A stretch of 64,000 nt of DNA from Octopus sinensis (taxonomy: Eukaryota): the NCBI RefSeq assembly GCF_006345805.1, contig NC_043026.1:12751579-12815578 (forward strand), in the 5' to 3' direction. The stretch's first letter is position 1. Each line of letters begins with the position of its first letter. This document shows, piece by piece, positions 15,741 to 53,309 of this stretch. Made by a program: the position numbers and the translations under genes. The notes below the pieces were generated by a model, which worked only from the letters and a program-made list of their open reading frames with translations, did no database searches and had not been told where the DNA came from.

Positions 15741-16373
15741 ATTCTCTTCATTTAATAACCTTTCATAGTGGCATCTCCTAGTCTCTGGTTTGCAGCCTCA
15801 TTAAATGCAAGTGAGCTGTCGTCCATTATGTATATGTATGTATACACACACAATGTGAAGGTGAAGTTGGAGTTCACAAATTGTTAGGTTGTACCCAATG
15901 TTATATGATGTCGTTTGTTAATCAATATAGAAATGTAACAATCCTATTTTGATCTCTCCTCTCTATCTAAATACTGTTTCTTTATTATTTCAGATTCACA
16001 GATGACATTGGCATGAAACAACTTTTGTACATTGGAGACATCTGGAATATTTATCAGTTTTTTAAAGACTAGAGGAAAATATTATAGAGAACAGATATAA
16101 TAACCCAACTGCTATAAATCCAGGATTGAATTACTGTGAAATATTTGCCCTGAGCAACATTTCTCCATCTCCTTACCTGTTGCTTTTGCATTCTAATTAA
16201 ACTTGAATATATTTCTAAAGGGGTTTGCAGCATCTTTAGATATTGATAAAGATCACAGTTGATTACAGTAGAAATATTTCTAAGGAAAAGGAAAAGGAAA
16301 TTATATTCTGTGTTGAGAGAAGAAAGACAAGGGAAAAGTTTAATGGTTGGATCCATTTGTATTCCTTAGAGAA

Positions 16374-17570
16374 ATGTCAAAAGATTTAGGAGAATCACAA
16401 CATGGTTGTGAAATCTGTGGTAAATCCTTCCCCACAGGTAATGATTTGGTTAAGCACATTTGTTTTCATACAGGTGAGAAGCCATTTCACTGTGATACCT
16501 GTGGTAAATCCTTCTCTCAAAACGGTAGCTTGAGTAAACACAGGCGTATTCACACAGGAGAGAAACCATTTCACTGTGATGTCTGTGGTAAATCTTTCAC
16601 GTTAAACAGTACCTTATTTGTGCATAAAAATATTCATTCTGCGGAAAAACCGTATAATTGTGATGTCTGTGGTAAATCATTCTCTGCAAGTAGCACCTTA
16701 ATTAAACATATACGTATCCACACAGGAGAGAAACCATATGAATGTGATATCTGCGGACAGGCATTCACTGAGGATGGTCAATTAAAAAGTCACAGGCGTA
16801 TTCACACAGGTGAGAGACCTTATCAGTGTGATATCTGTGGTGAATCATTCTCTGTAAGTAGCACCTTAACTAAACATATACGTATCCACACAGGAGAGAA
16901 ACCATATGAATGTAATATCTGCGGAAAGGCATTCACTGAGGATGGTCAGTTAAAAAGGCACAGGCGTATTCACACAGGAGAGAGGCCATATCAGTGTGAT
17001 ATCTGTAGTAAAACGTTCCCTGGAATTACTGACTTGAATACACACAAACGTATTCATACAAGGGAGAGACCATATCAGTGTGATATCTGTGGTAAATCTT
17101 TCACTTTAAACAGTACCTTGTTTATGCATAAAAATATTCATTCTGCAGGAAAACCATATAATTGTGATGTCTGTGGTAAATCATTCTCTGCAAGTAGTAC
17201 CTTAACTAAACATATACGTATCCACACAGGAGAGAAACCATGTGAATGTAATATCTGTGGAAAGGCATTCACTGAGGATGGTCAATTAAGAAGACACAGG
17301 CGTATTCACACAGGTGAGAGACCATATCAGTGTGATATCTGTAGTAAATCATTCGCTGGAATTACTGACTTGAATACACACAAACGTATTCATACAGGTG
17401 AGAGACCATATCAGTGTGATATCTGTAGCAAATCATTCTCTGCCAACTCTAGCTTCATTCGACACAAACGTGTTCATACAGGTGAGAAGCCACATCGCTG
17501 TGATATCTGTGGCAAAGCATTCTCTCAAAACAGTGATTTAACTAAACACAAAGGTATTCACACAGTGTGA
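16374..17570 (+). CDS. ZNF3: C2H2 zinc-finger protein, 14 fingers, 398 aa
   Basis: ATG at 16374; acceptor ends at 15993; terminates at a linker deletion (CACAG|TGTGA). Confidence 0.92.
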
Positions 17571-17811
17571 TAAATCTGTGGTAAATCATTCTCTGGAATT
17601 ACTGACTTGACTACAGACAAACGTTTTCATACAGGTGAGGAGCCATTTCACTGTGATACCTGTGGTAAATCCTTCTCTGACAACCCCGAACTTAACACGA
17701 CACCAACGTATTCATTCAGGGGAGAGACTATATCACTGTAGTATCTGGGGTTAAACATTCTCTCGGAGAAGTAACTTAACTACACATGCATCTGTCCATG
17801 TAAAAGTGTGA
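17565..17811 (+). pseudogene. About three decayed zinc fingers downstream of the ZNF3 stop
   Basis: Finger-like codons with frameshifts, ending in the family terminus [13 protein letters not shown]. Confidence 0.8.
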
Positions 17812-18061
17812 TTGCATCATTGTCAAACATCGTTAAAACACCCAACAACAATTAATATTTGCCAACCTGGTGACCTCTTCTGCAGGCAATGTAGTTGTAA
17901 GAGATGAAGATGAATCTAATCCCACTACTTGCCAGCAAAGCAAGGCCCAACTCTGCCAGACATGAATGTTGGTCAAGTGTGGCCGGGAACCAAACCTAAA
18001 GAGATGCTCCCCTGTGGCTCTCAAAGCCTCAACAAGAACAACAGAATCAACAAAACTAATG

Positions 18062-18865
18062 CAGCTTCACTGCAACCAACAACAGCTGACTTGGCAGACA
18101 CCCATAAAATTATTAACCATCTTACAAACAATAACTCTGAGCACCTTTTCAAACTCCACCTGTCTAACACCTATGGACATGTTTGCAAAGTCAGAAAACA
18201 GCACAGCTCCCATGACTTCAGAAAACATTTTTCACGCTAAGAGTTGCTGAAGCATGGAACAAACTGCCAGCATCAGTTGTTAGTTGTCGGAGCACTGCAT
18301 CCTTCAAAACTTCCATGCTTCCTGAGATTCGCCAACACTACACCTGATTTTCTACACACGCAAGCATGTATCTGACAACCAAGAGAATACCCTCCATCAG
18401 GCATTTGCCATATTATGAACGCCTTACTTCCCTGGGCATGGACACATTGAAACTCCGACGTCTGGCAGCTGACTTGGCAGACACCCATAAAGTTATTAAC
18501 CATTGCACAAACAATAACTCTGAGCACCTTTTCAAACTCCACCCATGGTCATATTTACAAAGTCAGCAAACAGCACAGCTCCCAAGACTTCAGGAAACAT
18601 TTTTTCATGCTAAGAGTTGCTGAAGCATGGAACAAACTGCCGGCATCACTTGTTAGTTGTCGGAGCACTGCATCCTTCAAAACTTCCATGCTTCCTGAGA
18701 TTCGCCAACACTACACCTGATTTTCTCCCCTCCATACACACACAAGCATGTATCTGACTCATACATTGTTCGCTTTCCAGACATTTCTACATTACTGCAT
18801 ATACTTTATACGCACTTTCTGACAAGTTGTGGTGCACCTGAGCACTGTATACAATAATTTCATTA
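18062..18865 (+). mobile_element. CR1-like LINE 3' ends, two in tandem
   Basis: Homologous to 27850-28160 (HKIINHLTNNNSEHLF...WNKLPASVV); block repeated twice; mirror arm has one copy. Confidence 0.85.
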
Positions 18866-19164
18866 TATTTAAGATTTTATTAAAAATATCGCAATGCTAA
18901 GTTATCTCCCTTGCATAGATAGAGTCGTGGACAAGATGTATATATGAAACGGTGCCCTCCAACCTTTTTTCTACAATGGACCGGCTTCATGCCAGACAAT
19001 AATTATGCGGACCGGTTGTGGTACATGGATGATTCCATTGCATTTCGATTCAGAGGGGAAATAATAAAAGAGTGATTTATTAAAGAGAAGACAAAGTGTA
19101 TAATTTTTTTCTCTCTCGTGTAGCGAATTTCTTTCGAATCTGAAAATTAGTTGAATTACATACT

Positions 19165-19545
19165 CTCTTTCTTGTTTCAGTAATTTGACTGCGGCCATGC
19201 TGGAGCACCGCCTTTAATCGAGCAACTCGACCCCAGGACTTGTTCTTTTGTAAGCCCAGTACTTATTCTATCGGTCTCTTTTGCCGAACCGCTAAGTAAC
19301 GGGGACATAAACACACCAGCATCGGTTGTCAAGCAATGATACGGGGGACAAACACAGACACACACGCATATATATATATACATATATACGACGGGCTTCT
19401 TTCAGTTTCCGTCTACCAAATCCACTCACAAGACTGTGGTCGGCCTGGGGCTATAGCAGAAGGCACTTGCCCAAGGTGCCACACAGTGGGACTGAACCCG
19501 GAACCATGTGGTTGGTAAACAAGCTACTTACCACTCCTGCGCCTA
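19165..19545 (-). mobile_element. SINE family A
   Basis: Reverse copy; mirrored at 50282-50695. Confidence 0.9.
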
Positions 19546-20705
19546 TAAATAAAAAATATACATTAATTGCAAAATGTAGCCAATGTTATTATAGATAGTA
19601 AAGGTAGACGTAAAATACTCAGTAATTATAGAATTATACTTTAATTATAAATGTGGTTACGTTATGAGAGTATTGAGCAGAGATGAATATTGAATATTTA
19701 AACAATTCTTTTAAAATTCAAGTCCAATATTCAATTTAATTATTATATAATTTTAAACAAATGAATTATTTCTTTGCAGCCTGGTAGCAAAAGTTCCACA
19801 GGTGGGTTCCGATATGCAATCCGTTGGTTGGGACTTCTCATATAAAATACAAAGTCCGTAGTTGCTCTCATATACAAGATTACATTGTCTGTCCTGTGTC
19901 CATTTATGGTTCTAGAAGATATTTTATATTTATGGTTACATAAGATACATATTTTGAGAAGCAATTTCGACATAGTATTTGTATCCAGTTTGGAACAGAA
20001 GTGGAAACAGATAGAATCCCATCTCCCTGTCTGTTGCCAGGGGCTACAAACAGAGAAACAGGTAAAAGAAGAAAAGAATATATTCAGCTGAATTTTATTT
20101 GTTCATCAATATTTTCTTTTTGTTTGATCAATATATGGTCACTTCACCTGCTAGAAACAACAGCTAAATTCTATGCAATTTAAGCCTTCTGGTTCTGAAA
20201 ATTAAAGACTACTTGCTGATGTAATGCTGGATAAAGAACGTCAGAAAAAAAAACTGGAGAGTCATGGATGGAATGTAACTGCATCTGCTGAAGAAGTCTG
20301 AGGATTAATATGCAAGAGAAAGAGAAAGACTGTTGCAGTGAGGGAGGTGGGTTTGTGAGTGTAAGAGGAGAGTGGGAGGTAGACAGGGGAGGAAAAGGGA
20401 GGGGGATGCAGTGAGTGGTGAAGCTTTGTATATTGAGGAGCAGAAAGAGAGAAATGATACAGTTGGAAGTGGGAGACTAGAAGACAGAGAGAGGAGAGAG
20501 TGGTGTTGGGGAGGAGGTGGAGGAAAGGGATTGTAGTGGATGATGAGGTGTAGTGGGGGGGGGGAGAAGACATAATACACACCCTAATAAGGGACAGTCC
20601 AGGGGAAAGGAGGGGACTCCACTGAGATGAATGTCTGTCTTGGCATTGGTCCCATGTATTAACACCATCACAGAAGTTACAAGGTCTTCTAAACACTATC
20701 AGTGG

Positions 20706-20736
<31 letters not shown>

Positions 20737-20817
20737 TCCAGGGAAAATAATCTCTGTAAATATTTAAAGAGCAACAGTATTGAATCACCAAATTAAGATT
20801 TAGATGAAGATCAGGAT

Positions 20818-23800
20818 TTACTGAAGATTTTGGATTTCCATTTCCAGTCAACTTCTGCTCTGAAACTTCTCCAGTCTCAACAAATTGGGTCCAGATGTCA
20901 TTGCAGAGCTTCTTGCATCAATCGAGGGCATTCATAATACAATTCATGGCATTTGCATTCTTCTTCATTCACCCGGGTCTCTTATTACTGAAGATTTTGG
21001 ATTTCCATTTCCAGTCAACTTCTGCTCTGAAACTTCTCCAGTCTCAACAAATTGGGTCCAGATGTCATTGCAGAGCTTCTTGCATCAATCGAGGGCATTC
21101 ATAATACAATTCATGGCATTTGCATTCTTCTTCATTCACCCGGGTCTCTTATTACTGAAGATTTTGGATTTCCATTTCCAGTCAACTTCTGCTCTGAAAC
21201 TTCTCCAGTCTCAACAAATTGGGTCCAGATGTCATTGCAGAGCTTCTTGCATCAATCGAGGGCATTCATAATACAATTCATGGCATTTGCATTCTTCTTC
21301 ATTCACCCGGGTCTCTTATTACTGAAGATTTTGGATTTCCATTTCCAGTCAACCTCTGCTCTGAAACTTCTCCAGTCTCAACAAATTGGGTCCAGATGTC
21401 ATTGCAGAGCTTCTTGCATCAATCGAGGGCATTCATAATACAATTCATGGCATTTGCATTCTTCTTCATTCACCCAGGTCTCTTATTACTGAAGAATTTG
21501 GATTTCCATTTCCAGTCAACTTCTGCTCTGAAACTTCTCCAGTCTCAACAAATTGGGTCCAGATGTCATTGCAGAGCTTCTTGCATCAATCGAGGGCATT
21601 CATAATACAATTCATGGCATTTGCATTCTTCTTCATTCACCCGGGTCTCTTATTACTGAAGATTTTGGATTTCCATTTCCAGTCAACTTCTGCTCTGAAA
21701 CTTCTCCAGTCTCAACAAATTGGGTCCAGATGTCATTGCAGAGCTTCTTGCATCAATCGAGGGCATTCATAATACAATTCATGGCATTTGCATTCTTCTT
21801 CATTCACCCGGGTCTCTTATTACTGAAGATTTTGGATTTCCATTTCCAGTCAACTTCTGCTCTGAAACTTCTCCAGTCTCAACAAATTGGGTCCAGATGT
21901 CATTGCAGAGCTTCTTGCATCAATCGAGGGCATTCATAATACAATTCATGGCATTTGCATTCTTCTTCATTCACCCGGTCTCTTATTACTGAAGATTTTG
22001 GATTTCCATTTCCAGTCAACCTCTGCTCTGAAACTTCTCCAGTCTCAACAAATTGGGTCCAGATGTCATTGCAGAGCTTCTTGCATCAATCGAGGGCATT
22101 CATAATACAATTCATGGCATTTGCATTCTTCTTCATTCACCCAGGTCTCTTATTACTGAAGATTTTGGATTTCCATTTCCAGTCAACTTCTGCTCTGAAA
22201 CTTCTCCAGTCTCAACAAATTAGGTCCAGATGTCATTGCAGAGCTTCTTGCATCAATCGAGGGCATTCATAATACAATTCATGGCATTTGCATTCTTCTT
22301 CATTCACCCAGGTCTCTTATTACTGAAGATTTTGGATTTCCATTTCCAGTCAACTTCTGCTCTGAAACTTCTCCAGTCTCAACAAATTGGGTCCAGATGT
22401 CATTGCAGAGCTTCTTGCATCAATCGAGGGCATTCATAATACAATTCATGGCATTTGCATTCTTCTTCATTCACCCAGGTCTCTTATTACTGAAGATTTT
22501 GGATTTCCATTTCCAGTCAACTTCTGCTCTGAAACTTCTCCAGTCTCAACAAATTGGGTCCAGATGTCATTGCAGAGCTTCTTGCATCAATCGAGGGCAT
22601 TCATAATACAATTCATGGCATTTGCATTCTTCTTCATTCACCCGGTCTCTTATTACTGAAGATTTTGGATTTCCATTTCCAGTCAACTTCTGCTCTGAAA
22701 CTTCTCCAGTCTCAACAAATTGGGTCCAGATGTCATTGCAGAGCTTCTTGCATCAATCGAGGGCATTCATAATACAATTCATGGCATTTGCATTCTTCTT
22801 CATTCACCCAGGTCTCTTATTACTGAAGATTTTGGATTTCCATTTCCAGTCAACTTCTGCTCTGAAACTTCTCCAGTCTCAACAAATTGGGTCCAGATGT
22901 CATTGCAGAGCTTCTTGCATCAATCGAGGGCATTCATAATACAATTCATGGCATTTGCATTCTTCTTCATTCACCCAGGTCTCTTATTACTGAAGATTTT
23001 GGATTTCATTTCCAGTCAACTTCTGCTCTGAAACTTCTCCAGTCTCAACAAATTGGGTCCAGATGTCATTGCAGAGCTTCTTGCATCAATCGAGGGCATT
23101 CATAATACAATTCATGGCATTTGCATTCTTCTTCATTCACCCAGGTCTCTTATTACTGAAGATTTTGGATTTACCATTTCCAGTCAACTTCTGCTCTGAA
23201 ACTTCTCCAGTCTCAACAAATTGGGTCCAGATGTCATTGCAGAGCTTCTTGCATCAATCGAGGGCATTCATAATACAATTCATGGCATTTGCATTCTTCT
23301 TCATTCACCCAGGTCTCTTATTACTGAAGATTTTGGATTTACATTTCCAGTCAACTTCTGCTCTGAAACTTCTCCAGTCTCAACAAATTGGGTCCAGATG
23401 TCATTGCAGAGCTTCTTGCATCAATCGAGGGCATTCATAATACAATTCATGGCATTTGCATTCTTCTTCATTCACCCAGGTCTCTTATTACTGAAGATTT
23501 TGGATTTACATTTCCAGTCAACTTCTGCTCTGAAACTTCTCCAGTCTCAACAAATTGGGTCCAGATGTCATTGCAGAGCTTCTTGCATCAATCGAGGGCA
23601 TTCATAATACAATTCATGGCATTTGCATTCTTCTTCATTCACCCAGGTCTCTTATTACTGAAGATTTTGGATTTACATTTCCAGTCAACTTCTGCTCTGA
23701 AACTTCTCCAGTCTCAACAAATTGGGTCCAGATGTCATTGCAGAGCTTCTTGCATCAATCGAGGGCATTCATAATACAATTCATGGCATTTGCATTCTTC

Positions 23801-24326
23801 TTCATTCACCCAGGTCTCTTATTACTGAAGATTTTGGATTACATTTCCAGTCAACTTCTGCTCTGAAACTTCTCCAGTCTCAACAAATTGGGTCCAGATG
23901 TCATTGCAGAGCTTCTTGCATCAATCGAGGGCATTCATAATACAATTCATGGCATTTGCATTCTTCTTCATTCACCCAGGTCTCTTATTACTGAAGATTT
24001 TGGATTTACATTTCCAGTCAACTTCTGCTCTGAAACTTCTCCAGTCTCAAAAATTGGGTCCAGATGTCATTGCAGAGCTTCTTGCATCAATCGAGGGCAT
24101 TCATAATACAATTCATGGCATTTGCATTCTTCTTCATTCACCCGGGTCTCTTATTACTGAAGATTTTGGATTTCCATTTCCAGTCAACCTCTGCTCTGAA
24201 ACTTCTCCAGTCTCAACAAATTGGGTCCAGATGTCATTGCAGAGCTTCTTGCATCAATCGAGGGCATTCATAATACAATTCATGGCATTTGCATTCTTCT
24301 TCATTCACCCGGGTCTCTTATTACTG
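20818..24326 (+). repeat. 167-bp tandem array, 21 units
   Basis: TTACTG boundary at 20818 and 24321 (3503 bp = 21 x 167 less a few 1-bp indels); ORF track repeats every 167 bp. Confidence 0.97.
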
Positions 24327-25118
24327 TGCAGCACCACATATGTTTATGATAAAATTTCACTTCTACACAGAGAATATCCAGATTCTTGTCTTTGGTAAGG
24401 CTCCAAGGTCATGTTTTTTTGGGGTTTTTTTTCACAAAACACTCGACAGATTCGAGAAATGGTTTGTCCGCAACCTTATGCCTCTTCTTGGGAGTGTAAG
24501 AAACAACATTGCCCTGTCTTCTTTTTTCTCCAAAACACAATCTTCAACTTGGTCCTGAATAGAATGGATAGAATACACATTCATGTGCTTGCCTGTCTGT
24601 GTTTGTGTATATATGCACCTCTGTCTCCTTGCGTGTGTGTGTGTTTATGTAACTATGTACCATGTTTGTATGTATGGATGTGCATCTTTATATGTGAGGA
24701 TCTGTGTCTCCAAATGTGTCTGTTCATATAGTCTACATACCTATCCGTCTGTATATTGATCTGTATATTGATAACAGCTTGTTATCACACACACATATCT
24801 TTTTTTTACTATGTGAATAAATTTATGTTTACAAGTTATTTTCTGAATGGAATGGATTTTAAAAAGCAACCTGTGTCCAGGTAAACTATGTGAATGCCAG
24901 GTAAGAATCTACTAAAGTGGCTGAAGTGGTTGGCATAGGGAAGGGCATCTGGCTGTAAAAAAACCATCTCAATGTGGTAACTTTGATGAGTATGGTTTCT
25001 GTCAGGAGTTAATGATTGCTGTTAAGGGCACAAAGGTTAAGCCGTGATTTACCAGAGAGAATGGTTTTAAGATTTCGGCTGTTGTTGGATGTTCTAATGA
25101 ATTCTGACAATGATACAA

Positions 25119-26612: not shown

Positions 26613-26661
<49 letters not shown>

Positions 26662-26667
26662 ATTCAC

Positions 26668-42760: not shown

Positions 42761-42797
<37 letters not shown>

Positions 42798-42799
42798 TA

Positions 42800-43339: not shown

Positions 43340-44400
43340 ACCCTGAAAGGATGAAAGGTGGAATTTGAAGTCAGGCCGTAGCGACGAGTGAAATACCAGT
43401 TTTGACAGCACGTAAAAGATTCTTATTTCTTTACTGCTCACAAGGGGCTAATTAAGTCGATTACTGCGTAACTGGTACTTAATTTATCGACCCCGAAGGG
43501 TTAAAAGACAAAGTCGACCTCGGCAGAATTTGAACTCACAACATAGCGGCAGACGAAATACCGCTAAGAATTTCGCCCGGCGCGCTAACGTTTCTGTCAG
43601 CTCGCCGCCTTATGCTTGGTTAACCACAATTAAGTATAAAATATATCTTTTAGAACATCGTCACCAAGGCCGTTGCTGGGAACAACGAAGATGCGTTTAT
43701 CACAGCCAAGATATTAACCACAGTAACCATGGTGATTTGCATCAAAATATTATTACTATTTTTTTCCCTTCTTTCTTCAAATTTTCTTCCGTTTCTCGCC
43801 GAGTGTTTTCCGTTACAACCTGTTTCACCCAGGAGAATATCAATAACATATTTTTGTATGTTTTACACGGAGATTTTGGTGTGAGTAAATATATTTTCAC
43901 ACTAAATATTGATTTGTATTGCATATATTTCTTTATTGCCCACAAGGGGCTAAACATAGAGGGGACAAACAAAGGCAGACAAAGGGAAAAAGTCGATTAC
44001 ATCGACTCCAGTGCGTAACTGGTACTTTATTTATCGACCCCGAAAGGATTAAAGGCAAAGTTGAACTCAGAACGTTGCGGCAGACGAAATACTGCTAAGC
44101 ATTGCGGCCGGCGTGCTAACGATTCTGCCAGCTCGCCGCCTTATTGATTTCTTTAGAATAACATGTAAGATATACATACGTGTTTCTTTATTGCCCAGAA
44201 GGGGACAAACAAGGACAGACAAACGGATTAAGTCGATTACATCGACCCCAGTGCATAACTGGTACTTTATTTATCGACCCCGAAAGGATTAAAGGAAAAG
44301 TCGACCTCGGCGGAATTTGAACCCAGAACGTAGCGGCGGACGAAATACGGCTACACATTTCGCCCGGCGTGCTAACGATTCTGCCAGCTCGCCGCCTTTA
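43340..44400 (-). mobile_element. Several SINE family B copies flanking the distal exon-1 module
   Basis: Family B cores at ~43340-43612, 43925-44143 and 44185-44400. Confidence 0.7.
43785..43880 (+). promoter_or_regulatory. Distal exon-1-like module of ZNF8
   Basis: GGAGATTTTGGT|GTGAGT donor at 43881; mirror of 29904-30000. Confidence 0.5.
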
Positions 44401-45030
44401 CATACCTATCTATCGATTGATCATACGTGCCGGACTTCTTGTCTGGCTTCCAGAAATCCGGGAATATGCCGACTTGAAAAATACACCCTTCCCCCACCCC
44501 ACATATATAAAAAAAAAAGAAGAAATTTTTACGGTGAGCAACGATCTTCTTCTTCAAATGTAAACAAAAGACCGTTCACCAGTTTGACTGCAACGGTACC
44601 CATACCGTAATTTAGCCTCTTAGGCAATTATTGATCATAATATTCCATGCTTCCTGAGATTCACCAACACTACACCTGATCTTTCTCCCCTCCATACACA
44701 CACAAACACGTATCTGACTCATACACTGTTCGCTTCCCAGGCATTTCTACATTACTCCATATGCTTTATTACACACTTTCTGACAGGTTGTGGGGCACCT
44801 GAGCCCTGGATACAATAATTTCGTTATTATTATTATTATTATTATGAAATAAGGGTTTCAAATTTTGCCAGAAGGGAGCGATTTGGGGAGAAGGGGACGA
44901 GACGATTATATCGAGCGCAGAGTTTTCATAGTACCTATTTCCTCCTCCCCTTTTGGAGCGGAGGGAATAAGTACCCCTTAAGGAGTTGGTTCTGGGGACG
45001 GGGGGGGGGGATATCCGCAGGTCGAAAGAG

Positions 45031-45143
45031 GGGGCGGATTACTTTTATCACATGACACCCCACACTTCCGTTTCCGCTACATCCTGCCTGACGCGGGAGA
45101 AGAACCGTAAAGTGTTTTTGTTTGTTTTTCACGAGATTTTGAG
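45031..45143 (+). promoter_or_regulatory. ZNF8 proximal promoter / exon 1
   Basis: GGGGCGGA, ATCACATGAC (45047-45056), ACTTCCGTTTCCGC (45064-45077), GAGATTTTGAG|GTGAGT donor at 45144. Confidence 0.72.
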
Positions 45144-45807
45144 GTGAGTAAACATATTTTCACTCTAAATATTGATTTGTGTAGCATAACAAGTAAGATA
45201 TCCACACCTATCTATCGATCGATCGATCGTAGGTGCCGGATCTCTTATCCGGCTTCCAGAAATCCGGGAATACTTATACCGTGTATAAGATGACCAGGTT
45301 TTCATCTTTACACTTTGTGGGTCCTGAGGGACGACTGTGGCCTTCCTTGCTGCCTCCCCCTTCTCTGGTCATATCTAATTCGGATTGTTTTCCTCCTCCA
45401 GAGCACACAACACTACGCTTCAGTGAGCGATGTTGAGCAGAATCTTCCAAAGTTAGACTAAGTTTCACCAAAGAACAGACGGAATTACACCCTCAACACA
45501 ACACGGCCTAATTTCCTATTTTACAAACGTAAAATCGATTCACAGTCGAAATTGCATCAATGAATTGCACGAGTATTCTTGTCGCAGTGGACCTTATGAG
45601 AAATGGCACTTTGCCAGTTCTTCGCAGTCGCAGCATATCTCCAGAGGTCTCGGTTTTTTTGTCATTGCCTCTGTGAGGCATAATGTTCAAAGGCCATGCT
45701 TCACTACCTCATCCCATGTCTTCCTGGGGCTACCTCAACCCCGGATTCATTCAACTGTTTGGGAGTGGTACTTTATTTACACAGCTCTCCTCATCCAATG
45801 TATGTGC

Positions 45808-45856
<49 letters not shown>

Positions 45857-46401
45857 AGTGTGATGGAGTAGTTGTAGTCTACAAATTTTTAGATTTCACC
45901 CAATGATGTCAATATAGAAATGTTATAACATTTCTCTTTTGATCTCTCCTCTCTATCTAAATACTGTTTCTTTATTATTTCAGATTAACGGATGACATTG
46001 GCATAAAACGACTTTTGTTCATAGGAGACATTTGGAATATTTACCATATTTTAAAGACTAAAGGAAAACGTTTTAGGGAACAAATATAATAACCCTACTG
46101 CTATAAATCTGGGATTGAATTACTGTGAAATATTGGCTCTCACCTGAGATTCATACCAACATTTCTCCATCTCCTTACCTGGTGCTTTTGCTTTCTAATT
46201 AAATTTGAATATATTTTTAAAGGGGTTTGCAGCATCTTTAGATATTTATAATGATCACAGTTGATAGCAGTAGAAATATTTCTAAGGAGTAAATTATTAC
46301 AAAAGAACAAGAAAAAGGAAATTATATGATTTGGTCAGAGAAGAAAAATTTAATATTGTGAGAAACTTCAATGGTTGGGTTGATTTGTATCCTTTAGAGA
46401 A

Positions 46402-47265
46402 ATGTCAAAAGAACTGAGAAAATCAAAACATTGGTGTGAAATCTGTGGTAAATCATTCTTTAGAAGTACTGAGTTGATTAAACACATTCGTGTTCATACA
46501 GGTGAGAAGCCATTTGACTGTGATACCTGTGGTAAATCATTCTCTCTAAGACATCACTTAACTGAACATAAACGTATTCATACTGGGGAGCGGCCACATC
46601 ACTGTGATGTCTGTGGTAAATCATTCTCTGCAAGTAGTACGTTAACTAAACACAAACGTATTCACACAGGAGAGAAACCATATCCCTGTGATATCTGTGG
46701 TAAGGCATTCACTGAGAATGGTCACTTACACAGACACAAACGTTTTCATACAGGAGAAAAGCCATTTCAATGTGTCACCTGTGGTAAGTCATTCTCTGAA
46801 GGTAATGCCTTAACAACACACAAACGTATTCACACAGGAGAGAAGCCATATCGCTGCAATATCTGTGGTACATCATTTTCTGAATGCGGAGTCTTAGTAA
46901 GACACAGACGTATTCACACGGGAGAGAGACCGTATCACTGTGTTATCTGTGGTAAATCATTCTCTGGAATTAATGACTTGACTAGACACAAACGTATTCA
47001 CACAGGGGAGAGACCATATCAGTGTGACACCTGTGGTAAATCATTCACTGCAAAACAGAACTTAATTAAGCACAGACGTGTTCATACAGGGGAGAAACCA
47101 TATCACTGTGACATCTGTGATAAATCATTCTCTCAGAGCAACAGCTTAACTACTCACAAACGTATTCATACGAGAGAAAAACCACATCACTGTGATATCT
47201 GTGGTAAATCTTTCTCTCAGAGAAGTAACTTAACTACACATGCATCTGTCCATGCGAAAGTGTGA
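46402..47265 (+). CDS. ZNF8: C2H2 zinc-finger protein, 10 fingers, 287 aa (arm paralog of ZNF4)
   Basis: Intact ORF; acceptor ends at 45983. Confidence 0.93.
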   Translation: MSKELRKSKHWCEICGKSFFRSTELIKHIRVHTGEKPFDCDTCGKSFSLRHHLTEHKRIHTGERPHHCDVCGKSFSASSTLTKHKRIHTGEKPYPCDICGKAFTENGHLHRHKRFHTGEKPFQCVTCGKSFSEGNALTTHKRIHTGEKPYRCNICGTSFSECGVLVRHRRIHTGERPYHCVICGKSFSGINDLTRHKRIHTGERPYQCDTCGKSFTAKQNLIKHRRVHTGEKPYHCDICDKSFSQSNSLTTHKRIHTREKPHHCDICGKSFSQRSNLTTHASVHAKV

Positions 47266-48028
47266 TTGTATCATTGTCAGAATTCATTAGAACATCCAAC
47301 AACAGCCGAAATCTTAAAACCGTTCTCTCTGGTAAATCACGGCTTAACCTTTGTGCCCTTAACAGTAACCATACTCATCAAAGTTACCACGTTGAGATGT
47401 TTTTTTATAGTCAGATGCCCTTCCTTATGCCAACCACTTTAGTAGATTCTTACCTGGCATTCACATAGTTTACCTGGACACAGGTTGCTTTTTAAAATCC
47501 ATTCCATTCAGAAAATAACTTGTAAACATAAATTTATTCACATAGTAAAAAAAAGATATGTGTGTGTGATAACAAATTGTTATCAATATACAGATCAATA
47601 TACAGACGGATAGGTATGTAGACTATATGAACAGACACATTTGGAGACACAGATCCTCACATATAAAGATGCACATCCATACATACAAACATGGTACATA
47701 GTTACATAACACACACACACACGCAAGGAGACAGAGGTGCATATATACACAAACACAGACAGGCAAGCACATGAATGTGTATTCTATCCATTCTATTCAG
47801 GACCAAGTTGAAGATTGTGTTTTGGAGAAAAAAGAAGACAGGGCAATGTTGTTTCTTACACTCCCAAGAAGAGGCATAAGGTTGCGGACAAACCATTTCT
47901 CGAATCTGTCGAGTGTTTTGTGAAAAAAACCCCCCAAAAAACACGACCTTGGAGCCTTACCAAAGACAAGAATCTGGATATTCTCTGTGTAGAAGTGAAA
48001 TTTTATCATAAACATATGTGGTGCTGCA

Positions 48029-49037
48029 CAGTAATAAGAGACCTGGGTGAATGAAGAAGAATGCAAATGCCATGAATTGTATTATGAATGCCCTCGATTG
48101 ATGCAAGAAGCTCTGCAATGACATCTGGACCCAATTTGTTGAGACTGGAGAAGTTTCAGAGCAGAAGTTGACTGGAAATGGAAATCCAAAATCTTCAGTA
48201 ATAAGAGACCCGGGTGAATGAAGAAGAATGCAAATGCCATGAATTGTATTATGAATGCCCTCGATTGATGCAAGAAGCTCTGCAATGACATCTGGACCCA
48301 ATTTGTTGAGACTGGAGAAGTTTCAGAGCAGAAGTTGACTGGAAATGGAAATCCAAAATCTTCAGTAATAAGAGACCCGGGTGAATGAAGAAGAATGCAA
48401 ATGCCATGAATTGTATTATGAATGCCCTCGATTGATGCAAGAAGCTCTGCAATGACATCTGGACCCAATTTGTTGAGACTGGAGAAGTTTCAGAGCAGAA
48501 GTTGACTGGAAATGGAAATCCAAAATCTTCAGTAATAAGAGACCCGGGTGAATGAAGAAGAATGCAAATGCCATGAATTGTATTATGAATGCCCTCGATT
48601 GATGCAAGAAGCTCTGCAATGACATCTGGACCCAATTTGTTGAGACTGGAGAAGTTTCAGAGCAGAAGTTGACTGGAAATGGAAATCCAAAATCTTCAGT
48701 AATAAGAGACCCGGGTGAATGAAGAAGAATGCAAATGCCATGAATTGTATTATGAATGCCCTCGATTGATGCAAGAAGCTCTGCAATGACATCTGGACCC
48801 AATTTGTTGAGACTGGAGAAGTTTCAGAGCAGAAGTTGACTGGAAATGGAAATCCAAAATCTTCAGTAATAAGAGACCCGGGTGAATGAAGAAGAATGCA
48901 AATGCCATGGATTGTATTATGAATGCCCTCGATTGATGCAAGAAGCTCTGCAATGACATCTGGACCCAATTTGTTGAGACTGGAGAAGTTTCAGGGGTAG
49001 AAGTTGACTGGAAATGGAAATCCAAAATCTTCAGTAA
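48029..49037 (-). repeat. 167-bp tandem array, 6 units (mirror of 20818-24326)
   Basis: CAGTAA boundaries at 48029 and 49032 (1003 bp). Confidence 0.97.
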
Positions 49038-50281
49038 ATCCTGATCTTCATCTAAATCTTAATTTGGTGATTCAATACTGTTGCTCTTTAAATATTTACA
49101 GAGATTTTTTTTCTCTGAAGGATATATATATATATATATATGTATATATATTCCACTGATAGTGTTTAGAAGACCTTGTAACTTCTGCGATGGTGTTAAT
49201 AGATGGGACCAATGCCAAGACAGACATTCATTTCAGTGGAATCCCCTCGACTGTCCCTTATTAGGGTGTGTATTATGTCTTCCCCTCCCCCCACTACAAT
49301 CCCTTTCCTCCACCTCCTCCCCAACACCACTCTCTCCTCTCTCTGTCTTCTAGTCTCCCACTTCCAACTGTATCATTTCTCTCTTTCTGCTCCTCAATAT
49401 ACAAAGCTTCACCACTCACTGCATCCCCCTCCCTTTTCCTCCCCCTCTTCTCTTACACTCACAAACCCACCTCCCTCACTGCAACAGTCTTTCTCTTTCT
49501 CTTGCATATTAATCCTCAGACTTCTTCAGCAGATGCAGTTACATTCCATCCATGACTCTCCTGTTTTTTGGGGGTTTTTTCTGATGTTCTTTATCCAGCA
49601 TTAAATCAGCAAGTAATCTCTAGTTTTCAGGACCAGAAGGTTTAAATTGCATAGAATTTAGCTGTTGTTTCTAGCAGGTGAAGTGACCATATATTGATCA
49701 AACAAAAACAAAATATTGATAAACAAATAAAATTCAGCTGAATATATTCTTTTCTTCTTTTACCTGTTTCTCTGTTTGTAGCCCCTGGCAACGGACAGGG
49801 AGATGGGATTCTATCTGTTTCCACTTCTGTTCTAAACTGGATACAAATACTATGTCGAAATTGCTTCTCAAAATATGTATCTTATGTAACCATAAATATA
49901 AAATATCTTCTAGAACCATAAACGGACACAGGACAGACAATGTAATCTTGTATATGAGAGCAACTACGGACTTTGTATTTTATATGAGAAGTCCCAACCA
50001 ACGGAGCGCATATCGGAACCCACCTGTGGAACTTTTGCTACCAGGCTGCAAAGAAATAATTCATTTGTTTAAAATTATATAATAATTAAATTGAATATTG
50101 GACTTGAATTTTAAAAGAATTGTTTAAATATTCAATATTCATCTCTGCTCAATACTCTCATAACTGTAACCACATTTATAATTAAAGTATAATTCTATAA
50201 TTACTGAGTATTTTACATCTACCATTACTATCTATAATAACATTGGCTACATTTTGCAATTAATGTATATTTTTTATTTAT

Positions 50282-50437
50282 AGGCGCAGGAGTGGTAAGT
50301 AGCTTGCTAACCAACCACATGGTTCCGGGTTCAGTCCCACTGTGTGGCACCTTGGGCAAGTGTCTTCTGCTATAGCCCCAGGCCGACCACAGCCTTGTGA
50401 GTGGATTTGGTAGACAGAAACTGAAAGAAGCCCGTCG

Positions 50438-50495
<58 letters not shown>

Positions 50496-50695
50496 TGTGT
50501 GTCTGTGTTTGTCCCAGTAGCATTGCTTGACAACCGATGCTGGTGTGTTTATGTCCCCGTTACTTAGCGGTTCGGCAAAAGAGACCGATGGAATACGTAC
50601 TGGGCTTACAAAAGAATCAGTCCCGGGGTCGAGTTGCTCGATTAAAGGCGGTGCTCCAGCATGGCCGCAGTCAAATTACTGAAACAAGAAAGAGA
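50282..50695 (+). mobile_element. SINE family A
   Basis: Mirror of 19165-19545. Confidence 0.9.
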
Positions 50696-50989
50696 GTATG
50701 TAATTCAACTAATTTTCAGATTCAAAAGAAATTCGCTACATGAGAGAGAAAAAAATTATACACTTTGTCTTCTCTTTAATAAATCACTCTTTTATTATTT
50801 CCCCTCTGAATCGAAATGCAATGGAATCATCCATGTACCACAACCGGTCCGCATAATTATTGTCTGGCACGAAGCCGGTCCATTGTAGAAAAAAGGTTGG
50901 AGGGCACCGTTTCATATATACATCTTGTCCACGACTCTATCTATGCAAGGGAGATAACTTAGCATTGCGATATTTTTAATAAAATCTTA

Positions 50990-51420
50990 AATATAATGAA
51001 ATTATTGTATACAGTGCTCATGTGCACCACAACTTGTCAGAAAGTGCGTATAAAGCATATGCAGTAATGTAGAAATGTCTGGAAAGCGAACAGTGTATGA
51101 GTCAGATACATGCTTGTGTGTGTATGGAGGGGAGAAAATCAGGTGTAGTGTTGGCGAATCTCAGGAAGCATGGAAGTTTTGAAGGATGCAGTGCTCCGAC
51201 AACTAACAACTGATGCCGGCAGTTTGTTCCATGCTTCAGCAACTCTCAGCGTGAAAAAATGTTTCCTGAAGTCATGGGAGCTGTGCTGTTTTCTGACTTT
51301 GCAAACATGTCCATGGGTGTTAGACAGGTGGAGTTTGAAAAGGTGCTCAGAGTTATTGTTTGTAAGATGGTTAATAATTTTATGGGTGTCTGCCAAGTCA
51401 GCTGTTGTTGGTTGCAGTGA
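50990..51420 (-). mobile_element. CR1-like LINE 3' end
   Basis: ORF 51139-51576 ends FFTLRVAEAWNKLPASVV...RQHYT. Confidence 0.85.
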
Positions 51421-51696
51421 AGCTGCATTAGTTTTGTTGATTCTGTTGTTCTTATTGTTGTTGTTGTTTGTGTTGAGGCTTTGAGAGCCACAGGGGAGCA
51501 TCTCTTTAGGTTTGGTTCCCGGCCACACTTGACCAACATTCATGTCTGGCAGAGTTGGGCCTTGCTTTGCTGGCAAGTAGTGGGATTAGATTCATCTTCA
51601 TCTCTTACAACTACAACATTGCCTGCAGAAGAGGTCACCAGGTTGTCAAATATTAATTGTTGTTGGGTGTTTTAACGATGTTTGACAATGATGCAA

Positions 51697-51940
51697 TCAC
51701 ACTTTTACATGGACAGATGCATGTGTAGTTAAGTTACTTCTCCGAGAGAATGTTTAACCCCAGATACTACAGTGATATAGTCTCTCCCCTGAATGAATAC
51801 GTTGGTGTCGTGTTAAGTTCGGGGTTGTCAGAGGATTTACCACAGGTATCACAGTAAAATGGCTCCTCACCTGTATGAAAACGTTTGTCTGTAGTCAAGT
51901 CAGTAATTCCAGAGAATGATTTACCACAGATTTATCACAC
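51697..51940 (-). pseudogene. Decayed zinc fingers downstream of the ZNF9 stop
   Basis: Mirror of 17565-17811. Confidence 0.8.
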
Positions 51941-52795
51941 TGTGTGAATACCTTTGTGTTTAGTTAAATCACTGTTTTGAGAGAAGGCTTTGCCACAGAT
52001 ATCACAGCGATGTGGCTTCTCACCTGTATGAACACGTTTGTGTCGAATGAAGCTAGAGTTGGCAGAGAATGATTTGCTACAGATATCACACTGATATGGT
52101 TTCTCCCTTGTATGAATACGTTTGTGTGTATTCAAGTCAGAAATTCCAGCAAATGATTTACTACAGATATCACACTGATATGGCCTCTCTCCTGTGTGAA
52201 TACGCCTGTGTCTTCTTAATTGACCATCCTCAGTGAATGCTTTCCCGCAAATATCACATTCACATGGTTTCTCTCCTGTGTGGATACGTATATGTTTAGT
52301 TAAGGTACTACTTACAGAGAATGATTTACTACAGATATCACACTGATATGGTCTCTCACCTGTGTGAATACGCCTGTGACTTTTTAATTGACCATCCTCA
52401 GTGAATGCCTGTCCGCAGATATCACATTCATATGGTTTCTCTCCTGTGTGGATACGTATATGTTTAATTAAGGTGCTACTTGCAGAGAATGATTTACCAC
52501 AGACATCACAATTATATGGTTTTTCTGCAGAATGAATATTTTTATGCACAAATAAGGTACTGTTTAAAGTGAAAGATTTACCACAGATATCACAGTGAAA
52601 TGGTTTCTCTCCTGTGTGAGTACGCCTGTGTTTACTCAAGCTACCGTTTTGAGAGAAGGATTTGCCACAGGTATCACAGTGAAATGGCTTCTCACCTGTA
52701 TGAAAACAAATGTGTTTAACCAAATCATTACCTGTGGGGAAGGATTTACCACAGATTTCACAACCATGTTGTGATTCTTCTAATTCTTTTGACAT
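51935..52795 (-). CDS. ZNF9: C2H2 zinc-finger protein, 10 fingers, 286 aa (arm paralog of ZNF3)
   Basis: ATG at 52795; acceptor at 53196-53198; exon-1 module missing upstream. Confidence 0.9.
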
Positions 52796-53309
52796 TTTTC
52801 TAAGGAATACAAATGGATCCAACCATTAAACTTTTCCCTTGTTTTTCTTCTCTCAACACAGAATATAATTTCTTTTTCTTTGTTGTTGTTGTTATCATTT
52901 ATTCCTTATTTCTACTGCGATCAACTGTTATTTTATCAATATTTAAAATTCTGCAAACTCCTTTGCAAATAGATTCAACTTAATTAGAATGCAAAAGCAA
53001 CAGATAACGAGATGGAGAAATGTTGCTATGAATCTCAGCTCAGATCAAATGTTTCACAGCAATTCAATCCTAGATTTATAACAGTTGGGATATTATATCT
53101 GTTCTCTATAATATTTCCCTCTAGTCTTTAAATTATAAATATTCCAGATGTCTCCAATGTACAAAAGTTGTTTTGTGCCAATGTCATCCGTGAATCTGAA
53201 ATAATAAAGAAACAGAATTAGATAGAGAGGAGAGATCAAAATAGGATTGTTACATTTCTATATTGAATAACAAATGACATCATATAACATTGAGTGAAAT
53301 CTAAAACTT

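What the first reader, a model, noticed from the sequence alone, without database searches (positions are those of the whole stretch)
16295..52875. ~36-kb nested palindrome of zinc-finger genes with breakpoints inside ZNF genes
Seen: landmarks mirror in exact reverse order: ZNF3/ZNF9, CR1 tails, SINE 19165/50282, 167-bp arrays, ZNF4/ZNF8, both exon-1 modules, SINE clusters, ZNF5/ZNF7. Left arm is ~16.3-32.9 kb and right arm ~39.8-52.9 kb, around a ~7-kb spacer holding the ZNF5 5' end and ZNF6. High identity starts in the ZNF3/ZNF9 5'UTRs (upstream they look only paralog-like) and ends inside the finger array of ZNF5/ZNF7. Inference: recombination between oppositely oriented ZNF paralogs builds the palindrome, which may then promote arm-to-arm gene conversion, as established for mammalian Y-chromosome palindromes. 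This would be a generative mechanism for the cephalopod ZNF expansion.
Basis: partly seen in the sequence, partly recalled or inferred. Interest (0 to 1): 0.85.

Follow-up and report, generated by a model that had tools for sequence, protein, structure and literature searches.

The report
Real octopus zinc-finger gene palindrome
A block of three zinc-finger genes in Octopus sinensis was copied in reverse next to itself before this species split from O. vulgaris, and the two copies have since exchanged patches of sequence; it is a genuine but ordinary kind of inverted duplication.

Summary
The window is Octopus sinensis CM016888.1:12,751,579-12,815,578. The left arm (15866/15875-32885) and right arm (39813-53313) are inverted copies around a 6.9-kb spacer (32886-39812). 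That spacer holds the ZNF5 5' half and an intact ZNF6. The arms are 97.1% identical over 10,597 aligned columns.

It is not a haplotype mis-join. An independent de novo nanopore assembly of O. vulgaris carries the same left arm, spacer, inner junction and inverted right arm. O. sinensis also has a separate haplotig of the left arm.

Four-way comparison of both arms in both species gives 113 arm-specific sites, so the duplication predates the roughly 2.5-My species split. It also gives 11 clustered sites where both arms of one species agree, against 2 of the discordant kind. Four of those 11 are derived states shared by both O. sinensis arms. That is post-speciation arm-to-arm gene conversion.

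Conversion is patchy. It leaves the ZNF4/ZNF8 unit about 5% diverged in both species.

The inner breakpoint lies inside a finger array and leaves ZNF7 truncated. The outer "identity step" at about 16290 is more likely the edge of a conversion tract. Homology runs on to the edge of the ZNF unit.

Formation by paralogue-paralogue recombination is not shown. This is a new member of a known kind.

The parts
15866..32885 (.). Left arm (the original copy): ZNF3, CR1-like tail, SINEs, 167-bp array, ZNF4, LINE fragment, TE-rich block, SINE cluster, 3' 7 fingers of ZNF5
   Evidence: conserved in O. vulgaris L005/L003 at 99.2%
39813..53313 (.). Right arm (the inverted copy): truncated ZNF7, SINE cluster, TE-rich block, ZNF8, 167-bp array, SINEs, CR1-like tail, ZNF9
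   Evidence: window 39813-49655 is present in O. vulgaris L003 at 98.2%
32886..39812 (.). Spacer, 6,927 bp: ZNF5 5' half and upstream region, TEs, ZNF6 with its 3' flank (one diverged copy of the 167-bp unit at 38521-38693), SINEs, and 400 bp unique within the window (39413-39810)
   Evidence: collinear in O. vulgaris
16374..17570 (+). ZNF3, 398 aa, 14 C2H2 fingers; carries a 336-bp (4-finger) internal duplication that ZNF9 lacks
   Evidence: identical protein in O. vulgaris and in the O. sinensis haplotig
51935..52795 (-). ZNF9, 286 aa, 10 fingers; arm partner of ZNF3 (276/286 aligned residues identical, omega 0.17)
25119..26066 (-). ZNF4, 315 aa, 11 fingers
46402..47265 (+). ZNF8, 287 aa, 10 fingers; arm partner of ZNF4 but with finger gains and losses and different DNA-contact residues (omega 0.61)
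32267..33382 (-). ZNF5, 371 aa, 13 fingers; only its 3' 7 fingers lie inside the left arm
39811..40431 (+). ZNF7: 5'-truncated copy of ZNF5 with 7 fingers, no start codon and an in-frame stop just upstream; not annotated as a gene; further deleted in O. vulgaris
39811..39843 (+). Inner junction: 33 bp of finger-linker-like sequence, about 70% matched to the cognate ZNF5 position (23/33) but 2-3 mismatches from other fingers; high identity begins at 39844
   Evidence: the same junction is in O. vulgaris
36795..37913 (+). ZNF6, 372 aa, in the spacer; head-to-head with ZNF5 as an older inverted pair of about 80% identity (32231-33992 vs 38031-36420); all 8 of 8 nucleotide differences from O. vulgaris are synonymous
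20818..24326 (.). 167-bp minisatellite, 21 copies (left arm)
   Evidence: 16 copies in the haplotig and 18 in the O. vulgaris left arm
48029..49037 (.). 167-bp minisatellite, 6 copies (right arm); about 3 copies in the O. vulgaris right arm
26625..28192 (+). 5'-truncated LINE (C-terminal part of RVT_1 plus a CR1-like tail), present in the left arm only in both species, so inserted after the duplication and before speciation
24332..24760 (.). Conversion tract (right partner about 48023-47595): O. sinensis arms 0.00% diverged, O. vulgaris arms 4.5%; 4 derived substitutions shared by both O. sinensis arms
28210..29460 (.). Homogenised tract (right partner about 45827-44577): O. sinensis arms 0.54% diverged, O. 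vulgaris arms 1.63%; 1 ARM site in 1,107
30573..31170 (.). Tract homogenised in both species (0.35% and 0.52%; no ARM sites, 3 SPECIES sites)
24761..26620 (.). Unconverted ZNF4/ZNF8 unit: 71 arm-specific sites shared by both species (arms 4.85% and 5.45% diverged; orthologues 0.07% and 0.80%)
53314..53472 (-). 3'-truncated SINE abutting the outer end of the right arm; the right arm lacks the first ~30 bp and the (TA)n(CA)n microsatellite that begin every other ZNF unit

Best explanation
This is a genuine inverted segmental duplication (a palindrome with a spacer) in a C2H2 zinc-finger gene cluster on a small, probably autosomal, chromosome of Octopus sinensis.

Origin. A block of about 13-17 kb carrying ZNF3, ZNF4 and the 3' seven fingers of ZNF5 was copied in reverse orientation. 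The copy was placed 6.9 kb to the right of its source, beyond ZNF6. The right arm is the copy: its ZNF5 homologue (ZNF7) is 5'-truncated, and its outer end lacks the first ~30 bp of the ZNF unit.

Timing. The event predates the O. sinensis / O. vulgaris split. Taking 3-4% divergence in unconverted arm segments against about 0.7-1% between orthologues gives a rough age of 7-15 My. This figure is inferred.

Later history. The arms acquired arm-specific TE insertions. The minisatellite arrays changed length independently. ZNF copies gained and lost fingers and changed contact residues. Patches of the arms, mostly intergenic, were homogenised by arm-to-arm gene conversion, some of it after speciation and still polymorphic in O. 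sinensis. The ZNF4/ZNF8 unit escaped conversion in both species. This is probably because indels and about 5% divergence block heteroduplex formation, or because homogenisation is selected against (inferred).

Formation mechanism (inferred, least certain). I favour a non-homologous or microhomology-mediated replicative template switch or fold-back event. One end fell in a finger linker and the other near the microsatellite-bounded edge of a ZNF unit. I do not favour homologous recombination between inverted ZNF paralogues.
For: Structure.

Reality of the duplication:
- The ZNF6 protein look-up returned O. vulgaris OX597841.1. That locus is collinear with window 26654-49655, including the spacer, the inner junction and the inverted right arm.
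- That assembly is de novo NextDenovo ONT and was passed through purge_dups.
- There are no Ns in the window or the loci.
- A separate O. sinensis contig (VCDQ01005994.1) is a 99.68% haplotig of the left flank and left arm. The right arm therefore cannot be the second haplotype.

Age: 113 ARM sites against 11 SPECIES and 2 CROSS sites among 5,053 four-way sites. The LINE and SINE indels are arm-specific in both species.

Conversion:
- SPECIES versus CROSS, 11 versus 2, binomial p = 0.011.
- Strong clustering of site classes: 40 runs against 79 expected, 0 of 20,000 permutations as extreme.
- In the tract 24332-24760 the arms are 0.00% diverged in O. sinensis and 4.5% in O. vulgaris.
- 4 of 4 SPECIES sites at 24626-24703 are derived on both O. 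sinensis arms relative to the ZNF2-flank outgroup. Two of them are still ancestral in the haplotig.
- O. vulgaris arms are 93.6-95.8% identical where O. sinensis arms are 97-99%.

Right arm is the copy.

Non-homologous junctions.
Against: - The outer end of the O. vulgaris right arm (window 49655-53313) could not be fetched, so only the inner junction is confirmed across species.
- No outgroup carrying the pre-duplication state was available, so the breakpoints and the formation mechanism are inferred from one derived state.
- Both boundaries pass from paralogue-like similarity (91.5% over 400 bp at the outer end; about 70% over 33 bp at the inner end) to high identity.
- The outer end falls within ~30 bp of a ZNF-unit edge. 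A random breakpoint does not explain this, unless the unit-edge microsatellite is itself a breakage hotspot.
- The long runs of O. vulgaris-right-arm-private sites are mostly derived relative to the outgroup (12:2 sites, about 8:2 events). They may therefore reflect change on that arm rather than conversion in O. sinensis.
- No GC bias was seen (16 S>W against 15 W>S).
- Part of the unevenness in identity may come from ectopic conversion with other ZNF paralogues. ZNF4 shares five otherwise unique upstream variants with ZNF10.
Confidence: 0.72

Rival explanations
1. The palindrome was built by homologous recombination, long-tract conversion or break-induced replication between pre-existing, oppositely oriented ZNF paralogues. 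A ZNF3-like gene already sat at the ZNF9 position and a ZNF fragment at the ZNF7 position. The interval between them was overwritten by an inverted copy of ZNF3...ZNF5, so both edges of high identity are crossover points inside paralogues.
For: - Identity changes fairly sharply at about 16290/52881, from 91.5% to 96.5-98.5%.
- At 39844 it changes from about 70% over 33 finger-like bases to 100% over the next 51.
- The outer limit of all homology coincides with the 5' edge common to every ZNF unit, as expected if that stretch is the recipient gene's own upstream region.
Against: - Only 33 bp of ZNF-like sequence lies beyond the inner edge, followed by DNA unique within the window. No chimeric gene is present.
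- The ZNF4/ZNF8 upstream region, deep inside the arms, shows the same roughly 9% arm divergence as the distal ZNF3/ZNF9 upstream region, and that divergence is shared by both species. So about 91% is simply what unconverted ZNF-unit DNA of this duplication looks like.
- ZNF3 and ZNF9 share derived indels in the distal stretch.
- From established knowledge, reciprocal exchange between inverted repeats gives inversions, not duplications. The model therefore needs a double switch at 77-91% identity.
Confidence: 0.18
2. Assembly artefact: two haplotypes of one locus joined in inverted orientation. A variant is an inverted haplotig inserted during scaffolding.
For: - The background arm divergence of about 1% is close to the 1.22% heterozygosity reported for O. 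vulgaris.
- The O. sinensis assembly has 5.2% duplicated BUSCOs against 0.5% for O. vulgaris.
- The arm differences (VNTR length, TE indels, finger number) are of kinds also seen between alleles.
- The arm ends lie in repeats.
Against: - The same left arm, spacer, inner junction and inverted right arm are present in the independent, purged, de novo O. vulgaris assembly.
- 113 arm-specific differences are shared by the two species.
- A true haplotig of the left arm exists separately, 99.68% identical to the left arm and clearly distinct from the right arm.
- There are no gaps in the window.
Confidence: 0.02
3. There is no arm-to-arm conversion. The mosaic of identity comes only from ectopic conversion of ZNF-unit DNA by other paralogues, plus local differences in mutation rate and alignment noise.
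For: - ZNF4 shares five otherwise unique upstream variants with ZNF10.
- Synonymous divergence in the ZNF exons (dS 0.09-0.21) exceeds the intergenic background.
- sVR sites in the tract 24332-24760 are mostly derived on the O. vulgaris right arm.
Against: - Four clustered substitutions are derived and shared by both O. sinensis arms but absent from both O. vulgaris arms and from the outgroup. Two are still polymorphic against the haplotig.
- SPECIES versus CROSS is 11 versus 2.
- A 353-site tract is identical between O. sinensis arms but 4.5% diverged between O. vulgaris arms.
- A right-arm-type 4-bp deletion and an A at 28308 occur in the left-arm haplotig.
Confidence: 0.08

Closest known systems
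Large palindromes of mammalian sex chromosomes (human Y P1-P8; X-chromosome palindromes conserved in primates)
   Same: Two inverted arms around a unique spacer, carrying genes, conserved between related species, with arm-to-arm gene conversion seen as species-specific shared states (compare PMC8600007 and PMC8981503).
   Different: - The arms here are only 97.1% identical overall (89-100% locally), against more than 99% (PMC8981503).
- Conversion is patchy and spares the genes.
- No GC bias was detected.
- The chromosome is probably an autosome. The O. sinensis Z is described as a large chromosome, 'chr20', whereas this record is 15 Mb. This is an inference.
- The arms are short (13-17 kb) and differ by many indels.
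Inverted segmental duplications with interlocus gene conversion in vertebrate autosomes
   Same: A young inverted duplicate of a multigene block, with a mosaic of converted and unconverted tracts and TE indels specific to each copy. This comparison rests on my own knowledge, not on a test here.
   Different: Found in a cephalopod, within the lineage-specific C2H2 ZNF expansion. The cephalopod C2H2 paper I checked does not mention inverted duplication, palindromes or gene conversion.
Inverted duplications formed by fold-back priming or by replicative template switching (FoSTeS/MMBIR), including inverted-repeat-mediated DUP-TRP/INV-DUP
   Same: An inverted copy sits next to its source with a spacer of a few kb. 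The junctions lack extended homology. A short non-cognate templated-looking stretch (33 bp) sits at one junction. An older inverted ZNF5/ZNF6 pair lies at the centre. The comparison rests on my own knowledge.
   Different: No chimeric inverted repeat is seen at a junction (ZNF6 is intact). The event is ancient and fixed, so its intermediates cannot be observed. The mechanism is not tested.
Tandem in-situ duplication of KRAB-ZNF clusters in mammals, and the tandem model of the cephalopod C2H2 expansion
   Same: Local multigene duplication enlarges a ZNF cluster, and the copies then diverge in finger number and contact residues.
   Different: The orientation is inverted rather than tandem, and one product is a truncated gene.

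Membership tests
Spacer-containing genomic palindrome (inverted segmental duplication) | Two long arms in inverted orientation, collinear in mirror order | tested here: met
   Arms of 17.0 and 13.5 kb, with 10,597 aligned columns at 97.1% identity and all landmarks mirrored
Spacer-containing genomic palindrome (inverted segmental duplication) | A non-duplicated spacer between the arms | tested here: met
   A 6,927-bp spacer at 32886-39812 with ZNF6 and DNA unique within the window
Spacer-containing genomic palindrome (inverted segmental duplication) | Real in the genome rather than an assembly product | tested here: met
   Present in the independent O. vulgaris assembly, and a separate haplotig exists in O. 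sinensis. Read depth and spanning reads could not be tested.
Sex-chromosome-type palindrome maintained by gene conversion | Arm-to-arm identity above 99% along the arms | tested here: not met
   97.1% overall, and 89-95% in the ZNF units. Identity of 99.5-100% is reached only in tracts.
Sex-chromosome-type palindrome maintained by gene conversion | Concerted evolution: arms within a species are more alike than orthologous arms between species | tested here: inconclusive
   True in tracts (24332-24760, parts of 28210-29460) and supported by SPECIES versus CROSS of 11 versus 2. Over most sites the orthology pattern dominates, with 113 ARM sites.
Sex-chromosome-type palindrome maintained by gene conversion | GC-biased conversion | tested here: not met
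   16 S>W against 15 W>S at candidate converted sites. The sample is small.
Sex-chromosome-type palindrome maintained by gene conversion | Located on a sex chromosome | not tested
   The only indication is that the O. sinensis Z is described as a large chromosome, 'chr20', while this record is 15.1 Mb.
Homology-mediated rearrangement between inverted paralogues | Junctions lie within extended homologous paralogue sequence and leave a chimeric paralogue | tested here: inconclusive
   Inner junction: only 33 bp of ZNF-like sequence, then unique DNA, and no chimera. Outer junction: identity steps from 91.5% to 97% inside ZNF3/ZNF9 upstream homology, which can equally be a conversion-tract edge.
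False inverted duplication (haplotig mis-join) | Absent from independent assemblies, with the second copy being the only other haplotype | tested here: not met
   Present in O. vulgaris, and a third left-arm-like sequence (the haplotig) exists in O. sinensis
C2H2 zinc-finger genes | Tandem C2H2 fingers with H/C links | tested here: met
   Pfam zf-C2H2 and zf-H2C2_2 hits. There are 7-14 fingers per gene and an 84-bp periodicity.

The most novel reading that the evidence does not exclude
Inverted multigene duplications may be a recurrent way in which octopus C2H2 ZNF clusters grow. After each such event, arm-to-arm conversion would keep the intergenic and regulatory DNA of the two arms alike. 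The finger-coding units would be systematically excluded from conversion and left free to diversify. That would make palindromes an engine of ZNF diversification rather than of gene preservation, the opposite of the role proposed for Y-chromosome palindromes.
Probability: 0.12. Interest if true: 0.6.

Novelty: new member of a known kind. Interest (0 to 1): 0.4.

Why it matters
- It shows, with sequence from two species, that at least one step of the octopus C2H2 expansion was an inverted duplication of a three-gene block rather than a tandem one.
- That single event yielded two intact new ZNF genes with altered finger number and contact residues, and one decaying fragment.
- It gives a dated, cross-species example of patchy arm-to-arm gene conversion in an invertebrate, probably on an autosome.
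- It is also a practical caution. The O. sinensis assembly retains haplotigs, so apparent duplications there need the kind of cross-species check used here.

Tried and rejected
- The search for homologous proteins with ZNF5 returned only generic 35-56% identical ZNFs from other animals and no octopus orthologue.
- The listing of cluster members did not contain any of the window's ZNF proteins, with or without the stop codon.
- Look-ups of short ORFs spanning the inner and outer junctions, intended to find independent contigs, found nothing.
- Look-ups of ZNF9, ZNF10 and ZNF5 found nothing. The O. vulgaris outer right boundary and the rest of the O. sinensis haplotig could therefore not be fetched.
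- My first BLAST chaining chose wrong HSPs. I replaced it with global alignment.
- The five-sequence MAFFT alignment inflated arm differences in non-homologous stretches. I replaced it with composed pairwise maps.
- A test for GC-biased conversion found no bias.
- Reconstructing an ancestral insertion site from the truncated SINE at 53314 and the sequence left of 39812 found no match (by inspection).
- ARAGORN found no tRNA-like SINE heads.
- I considered ZNF6 as a ZNF5/ZNF6 chimeric junction and rejected it, because its identity to ZNF5 and ZNF7 is uniformly about 80%.

Full report
**Source and structure.** Exact look-ups of the ZNF4 and ZNF8 proteins place the window on Octopus sinensis GCA_006345805.1, record CM016888.1 (15.1 Mb), at 12,751,579-12,815,578 in the record's orientation. 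The window contains no N. Self-BLAST finds kilobase-scale inverted matches at 93-99% identity. A global alignment of the left side against the reverse complement of the right side fixes the anatomy:

- Left arm 15875-32885, with identity of at least 96.5% from 16288.
- Right arm 53313-39813.
- Spacer 32886-39812, 6,927 bp.
- Outside the 167-bp arrays, 10,597 columns align at 97.1%.

ZNF3(+)/ZNF9(-), ZNF4(-)/ZNF8(+) and ZNF5(-)/ZNF7(+) are pairs. So are the CR1-like tails, the SINEs and the 167-bp arrays of 21 and 6 copies. Pfam confirms C2H2 fingers. It also shows that the left-only 1,568-bp insert (26625-28192) is a 5'-truncated LINE with the C-terminal part of a reverse transcriptase.

**Gene units.** Nine ZNF coding exons begin with ATGTC(A/G)AAAG. 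In each paralogue except ZNF1 and ZNF9, the roughly 500 bp upstream starts at a (TA)n(CA)n microsatellite. All of them contain a conserved splice acceptor (tttcag|ATTCAC). ZNF9 lacks the microsatellite. The cluster is therefore built of repeated units with a common 5' edge.

- ZNF3 has 14 fingers and ZNF9 has 10. The difference is a 336-bp, 4-finger duplication in ZNF3.
- ZNF4 has 11 fingers and ZNF8 has 10, with different contact residues.
- ZNF7 has the last 7 fingers of ZNF5, no start codon and a stop just upstream.
- Arm-pair omega values are 0.17, 0.61 and 0.25.
- ZNF6 in the spacer is head-to-head with ZNF5. The two form an older inverted pair of about 80% identity. That is the only sense in which the structure is 'nested'.

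**Is it an assembly artefact?** This was a serious possibility. Background arm divergence is near 1%. The O. vulgaris genome paper reports 1.22% heterozygosity for that species. It also reports 5.2% duplicated BUSCOs for the O. sinensis assembly, against 0.5% for its own.

The ZNF6 protein look-up, however, returned a second place: O. vulgaris GCA_951406725.2, OX597841.1. That 21-kb locus (L003, no N) is collinear with window 26654-49655:

- Left-arm interior including the LINE fragment: 98.0%.
- ZNF5, spacer and ZNF6: 98.3%.
- The rest of the spacer, across the 39812/39813 junction and into ZNF7: 96.0%.
- The inverted right arm through ZNF8 into the 167-bp array: 96.6-96.8%.

L003 is itself an inverted repeat. 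The O. vulgaris assembly is de novo (NextDenovo on ONT reads, Hypo polishing, purge_dups) and was only compared with O. sinensis afterwards.

The ZNF3 look-up gave the O. vulgaris left side (L005). It also gave a second O. sinensis record, the 283-kb contig VCDQ01005994.1 (L006). L006 follows the left flank and left arm at 99.68% and is clearly unlike the right arm. It is therefore the real alternative haplotype, and the right arm cannot be. The mis-join hypothesis is rejected.

**Age and gene conversion.** I composed pairwise alignments of the O. sinensis left and right arms (SL, SR) and the O. vulgaris left and right arms (VL, VR). This gave 5,053 ungapped four-way sites over left coordinates 20175-32880.

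| Site pattern | Meaning | Count |
|---|---|---|
| ARM | SL=VL, differing from SR=VR | 113 |
| SPECIES | SL=SR, differing from VL=VR | 11 |
| CROSS | SL=VR, differing from SR=VL | 2 |
| sVR | private to VR | 60 |
| sSR | private to SR | 16 |
| sVL | private to VL | 13 |
| sSL | private to SL | 4 |

The dominance of ARM sites means that the duplication, and most arm differences, predate the species split. That split is dated at 2.5 My in the paper read.

The excess of SPECIES over CROSS sites (binomial p = 0.011) and the strong clustering of site classes show a mosaic history. The clustering test found 40 runs against 79 expected, with 0 of 20,000 permutations as extreme. Arm and orthologue divergence by segment:

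| Left coordinates | O. sinensis arms | O. vulgaris arms | Note |
|---|---|---|---|
| 24332-24760 | 0.00% | 4.5% | 353 sites |
| 28210-29460 | 0.54% | 1.63% | |
| 30573-31170 | 0.35% | 0.52% | |
| 24761-26620 (ZNF4/ZNF8 unit) | 4.85% | 5.45% | orthologues 0.07% and 0.80% |
| 29736-30169 | 3.96% | 4.49% | |
| 31171-31506 | 5.3% | 6.4% | |

I used the ZNF2 3' flank as an outgroup (91% identical). All four SPECIES sites at 24626-24703 are derived states present on both O. sinensis arms and absent from both O. vulgaris arms. At two of them the O. sinensis haplotig still has the ancestral base. The haplotig also carries a right-arm-type 4-bp deletion and one right-arm-type base in a left-arm background. 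These observations require sequence transfer between arms after speciation.

The long runs of VR-private sites are ambiguous. Against the outgroup they are mostly derived on VR (12:2 sites, about 8:2 events). No GC bias is seen.

For the age, I compared about 3-4% in unconverted arm segments with about 0.7-1% between orthologues. This suggests a duplication age of roughly 7-15 My. It is an inference that assumes a clock and no hidden conversion.

**Boundaries.**

*Inner boundary.* High identity begins at 39844. The 33 bases before it (39811-39843) look like a finger linker. They match the cognate ZNF5 position at only 23 of 33 bases, yet differ by 2-3 mismatches from linkers two and four fingers away. 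Upstream of that lie 400 bp with no similarity to anything else in the window. The same junction is present in O. vulgaris.

*Outer boundary.* Identity is 91.5% over 15875-16287 and 96.5-98.5% after about 16290. A 20-bp indel sits at the change point. All homology ends at 15866-15875 / 53313. On the right, a 3'-truncated SINE abuts a unit that lacks its first ~30 bp and its microsatellite.

The ZNF4/ZNF8 upstream region lies in the middle of the arms. It shows the same roughly 9% arm divergence, fixed in both species. I therefore read the 16290 step as the edge of a conversion tract, stopped at a heterology. I read the unit edge as the end of the original duplication.

It would explain why the outer end coincides with a unit edge. 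A breakage-prone microsatellite at that edge would explain the same coincidence.

**After the duplication.**

- Changes shared by both species, and so older than the split: a LINE in the left arm, and a 250-bp element in the right arm.
- Array copy numbers are arm-specific: 21, 16 and 18 copies on left arms, 6 and 3 on right arms.
- O. vulgaris has lost window 39949-41565. Its ZNF7 remnant is a fused, SINE-interrupted fragment.
- ZNF6 shows 8 nucleotide differences between species, all synonymous. ZNF3 shows 2, both synonymous. Both genes are under constraint.
- ZNF4 shares five otherwise unique upstream variants with ZNF10. This indicates additional ectopic exchange among paralogues.

**Comparison and verdict.** The structure works like the spacer-containing palindromes of mammalian sex chromosomes, in that the arms exchange sequence. 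It fails their defining arm identity of more than 99%, shows no GC bias, and is probably autosomal. It is best filed as an inverted segmental duplication with interlocus gene conversion.

A recent paper on the cephalopod C2H2 expansions does not mention inverted duplication, palindromes or gene conversion. A full-text search for octopus, C2H2, zinc finger and inverted duplication found no paper among those listed that used the phrase 'inverted duplication'. The instance therefore appears to be undescribed, but the kind is well known.

Noticed in passing
L006 (O. sinensis VCDQ01005994.1:137519-158715), matching window 6678-29105: A 283-kb contig in the same assembly duplicates the left flank and left arm at 99.68%. 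It differs by structural variants: no 372-bp duplication, a 317-bp gap, and 16 instead of 21 array copies. It appears to be a retained haplotig, which fits the 5.2% duplicated BUSCOs reported for this assembly.
   Followed up: partly
window 20818-24326 and 48029-49037; single diverged copy at 38521-38693: The 167-bp minisatellite derives from the 3' flank of the ZNF unit. ZNF6 has one unexpanded copy at about 81% identity, and the ZNF2 flank is related. Copy number is 21/16/18 on the left arms (window, haplotig, O. vulgaris) and 6/3 on the right arms.
   Followed up: partly
window: upstream of ZNF2, ZNF3, ZNF4, ZNF5, ZNF6, ZNF8 and ZNF10, e.g. 15830-15862, 26614-26663, 45809-45850: These ZNF units start with a (TA)n(CA)n microsatellite, followed by about 500 conserved bp with a splice acceptor. 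The microsatellite is a possible recurrent duplication endpoint.
   Followed up: partly
window 26100-26600 (ZNF4 upstream) vs 57800-58330 (ZNF10 upstream): ZNF4 shares five variants with ZNF10 alone among nine paralogues, within about 80 alignment columns. This suggests ectopic gene conversion between non-arm paralogues.
   Followed up: partly
L003 12988-13160 vs window 39813-41565: O. vulgaris lacks about 1.6 kb of the right arm (most of ZNF7 and its 3' flank). The remnant is a fused finger that runs into a SINE.
   Followed up: partly
O. vulgaris OX597841.1, about 5,977,875-5,984,991 (between L005 and L003): Sequence equivalent to window 26654-28042 (the LINE fragment) occurs twice, about 7.1 kb apart, in O. 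vulgaris. The intervening 5.7 kb was not fetched. It could be a local duplication, a longer LINE or an assembly problem.
   Followed up: no
window 13999-14474, 56012-56724, 62272-62749; partial copies at 35805-36007 and 11955-12138: A repeat family with internal 237-bp tandem units occurs on both flanks of the palindrome, in mirror orientation at 95.6% identity (13999-14548 vs 56487-55938). Further copies elsewhere in the window make this look like a transposable element rather than an outer arm.
   Followed up: partly
window 18083-18353 and 18466-18726: A tandem duplication at about 91% identity inside the CR1-like tail of the left arm. It is present in the window and in O. vulgaris but absent from the O. 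sinensis haplotig and from the right arm.
   Followed up: partly
window 36795-37913 (ZNF6) and 16374-17570 (ZNF3): The protein sequences are identical between O. sinensis and O. vulgaris, despite 8 and 2 nucleotide differences respectively, all synonymous. ZNF4, ZNF5 and ZNF8 have 2-5 amino-acid changes.
   Followed up: yes
window 1-718 and 4776-5725: Tandem arrays with periods of 159 bp and 185/355 bp, built from SINE-like sequence. They lie outside the palindrome.
   Followed up: no
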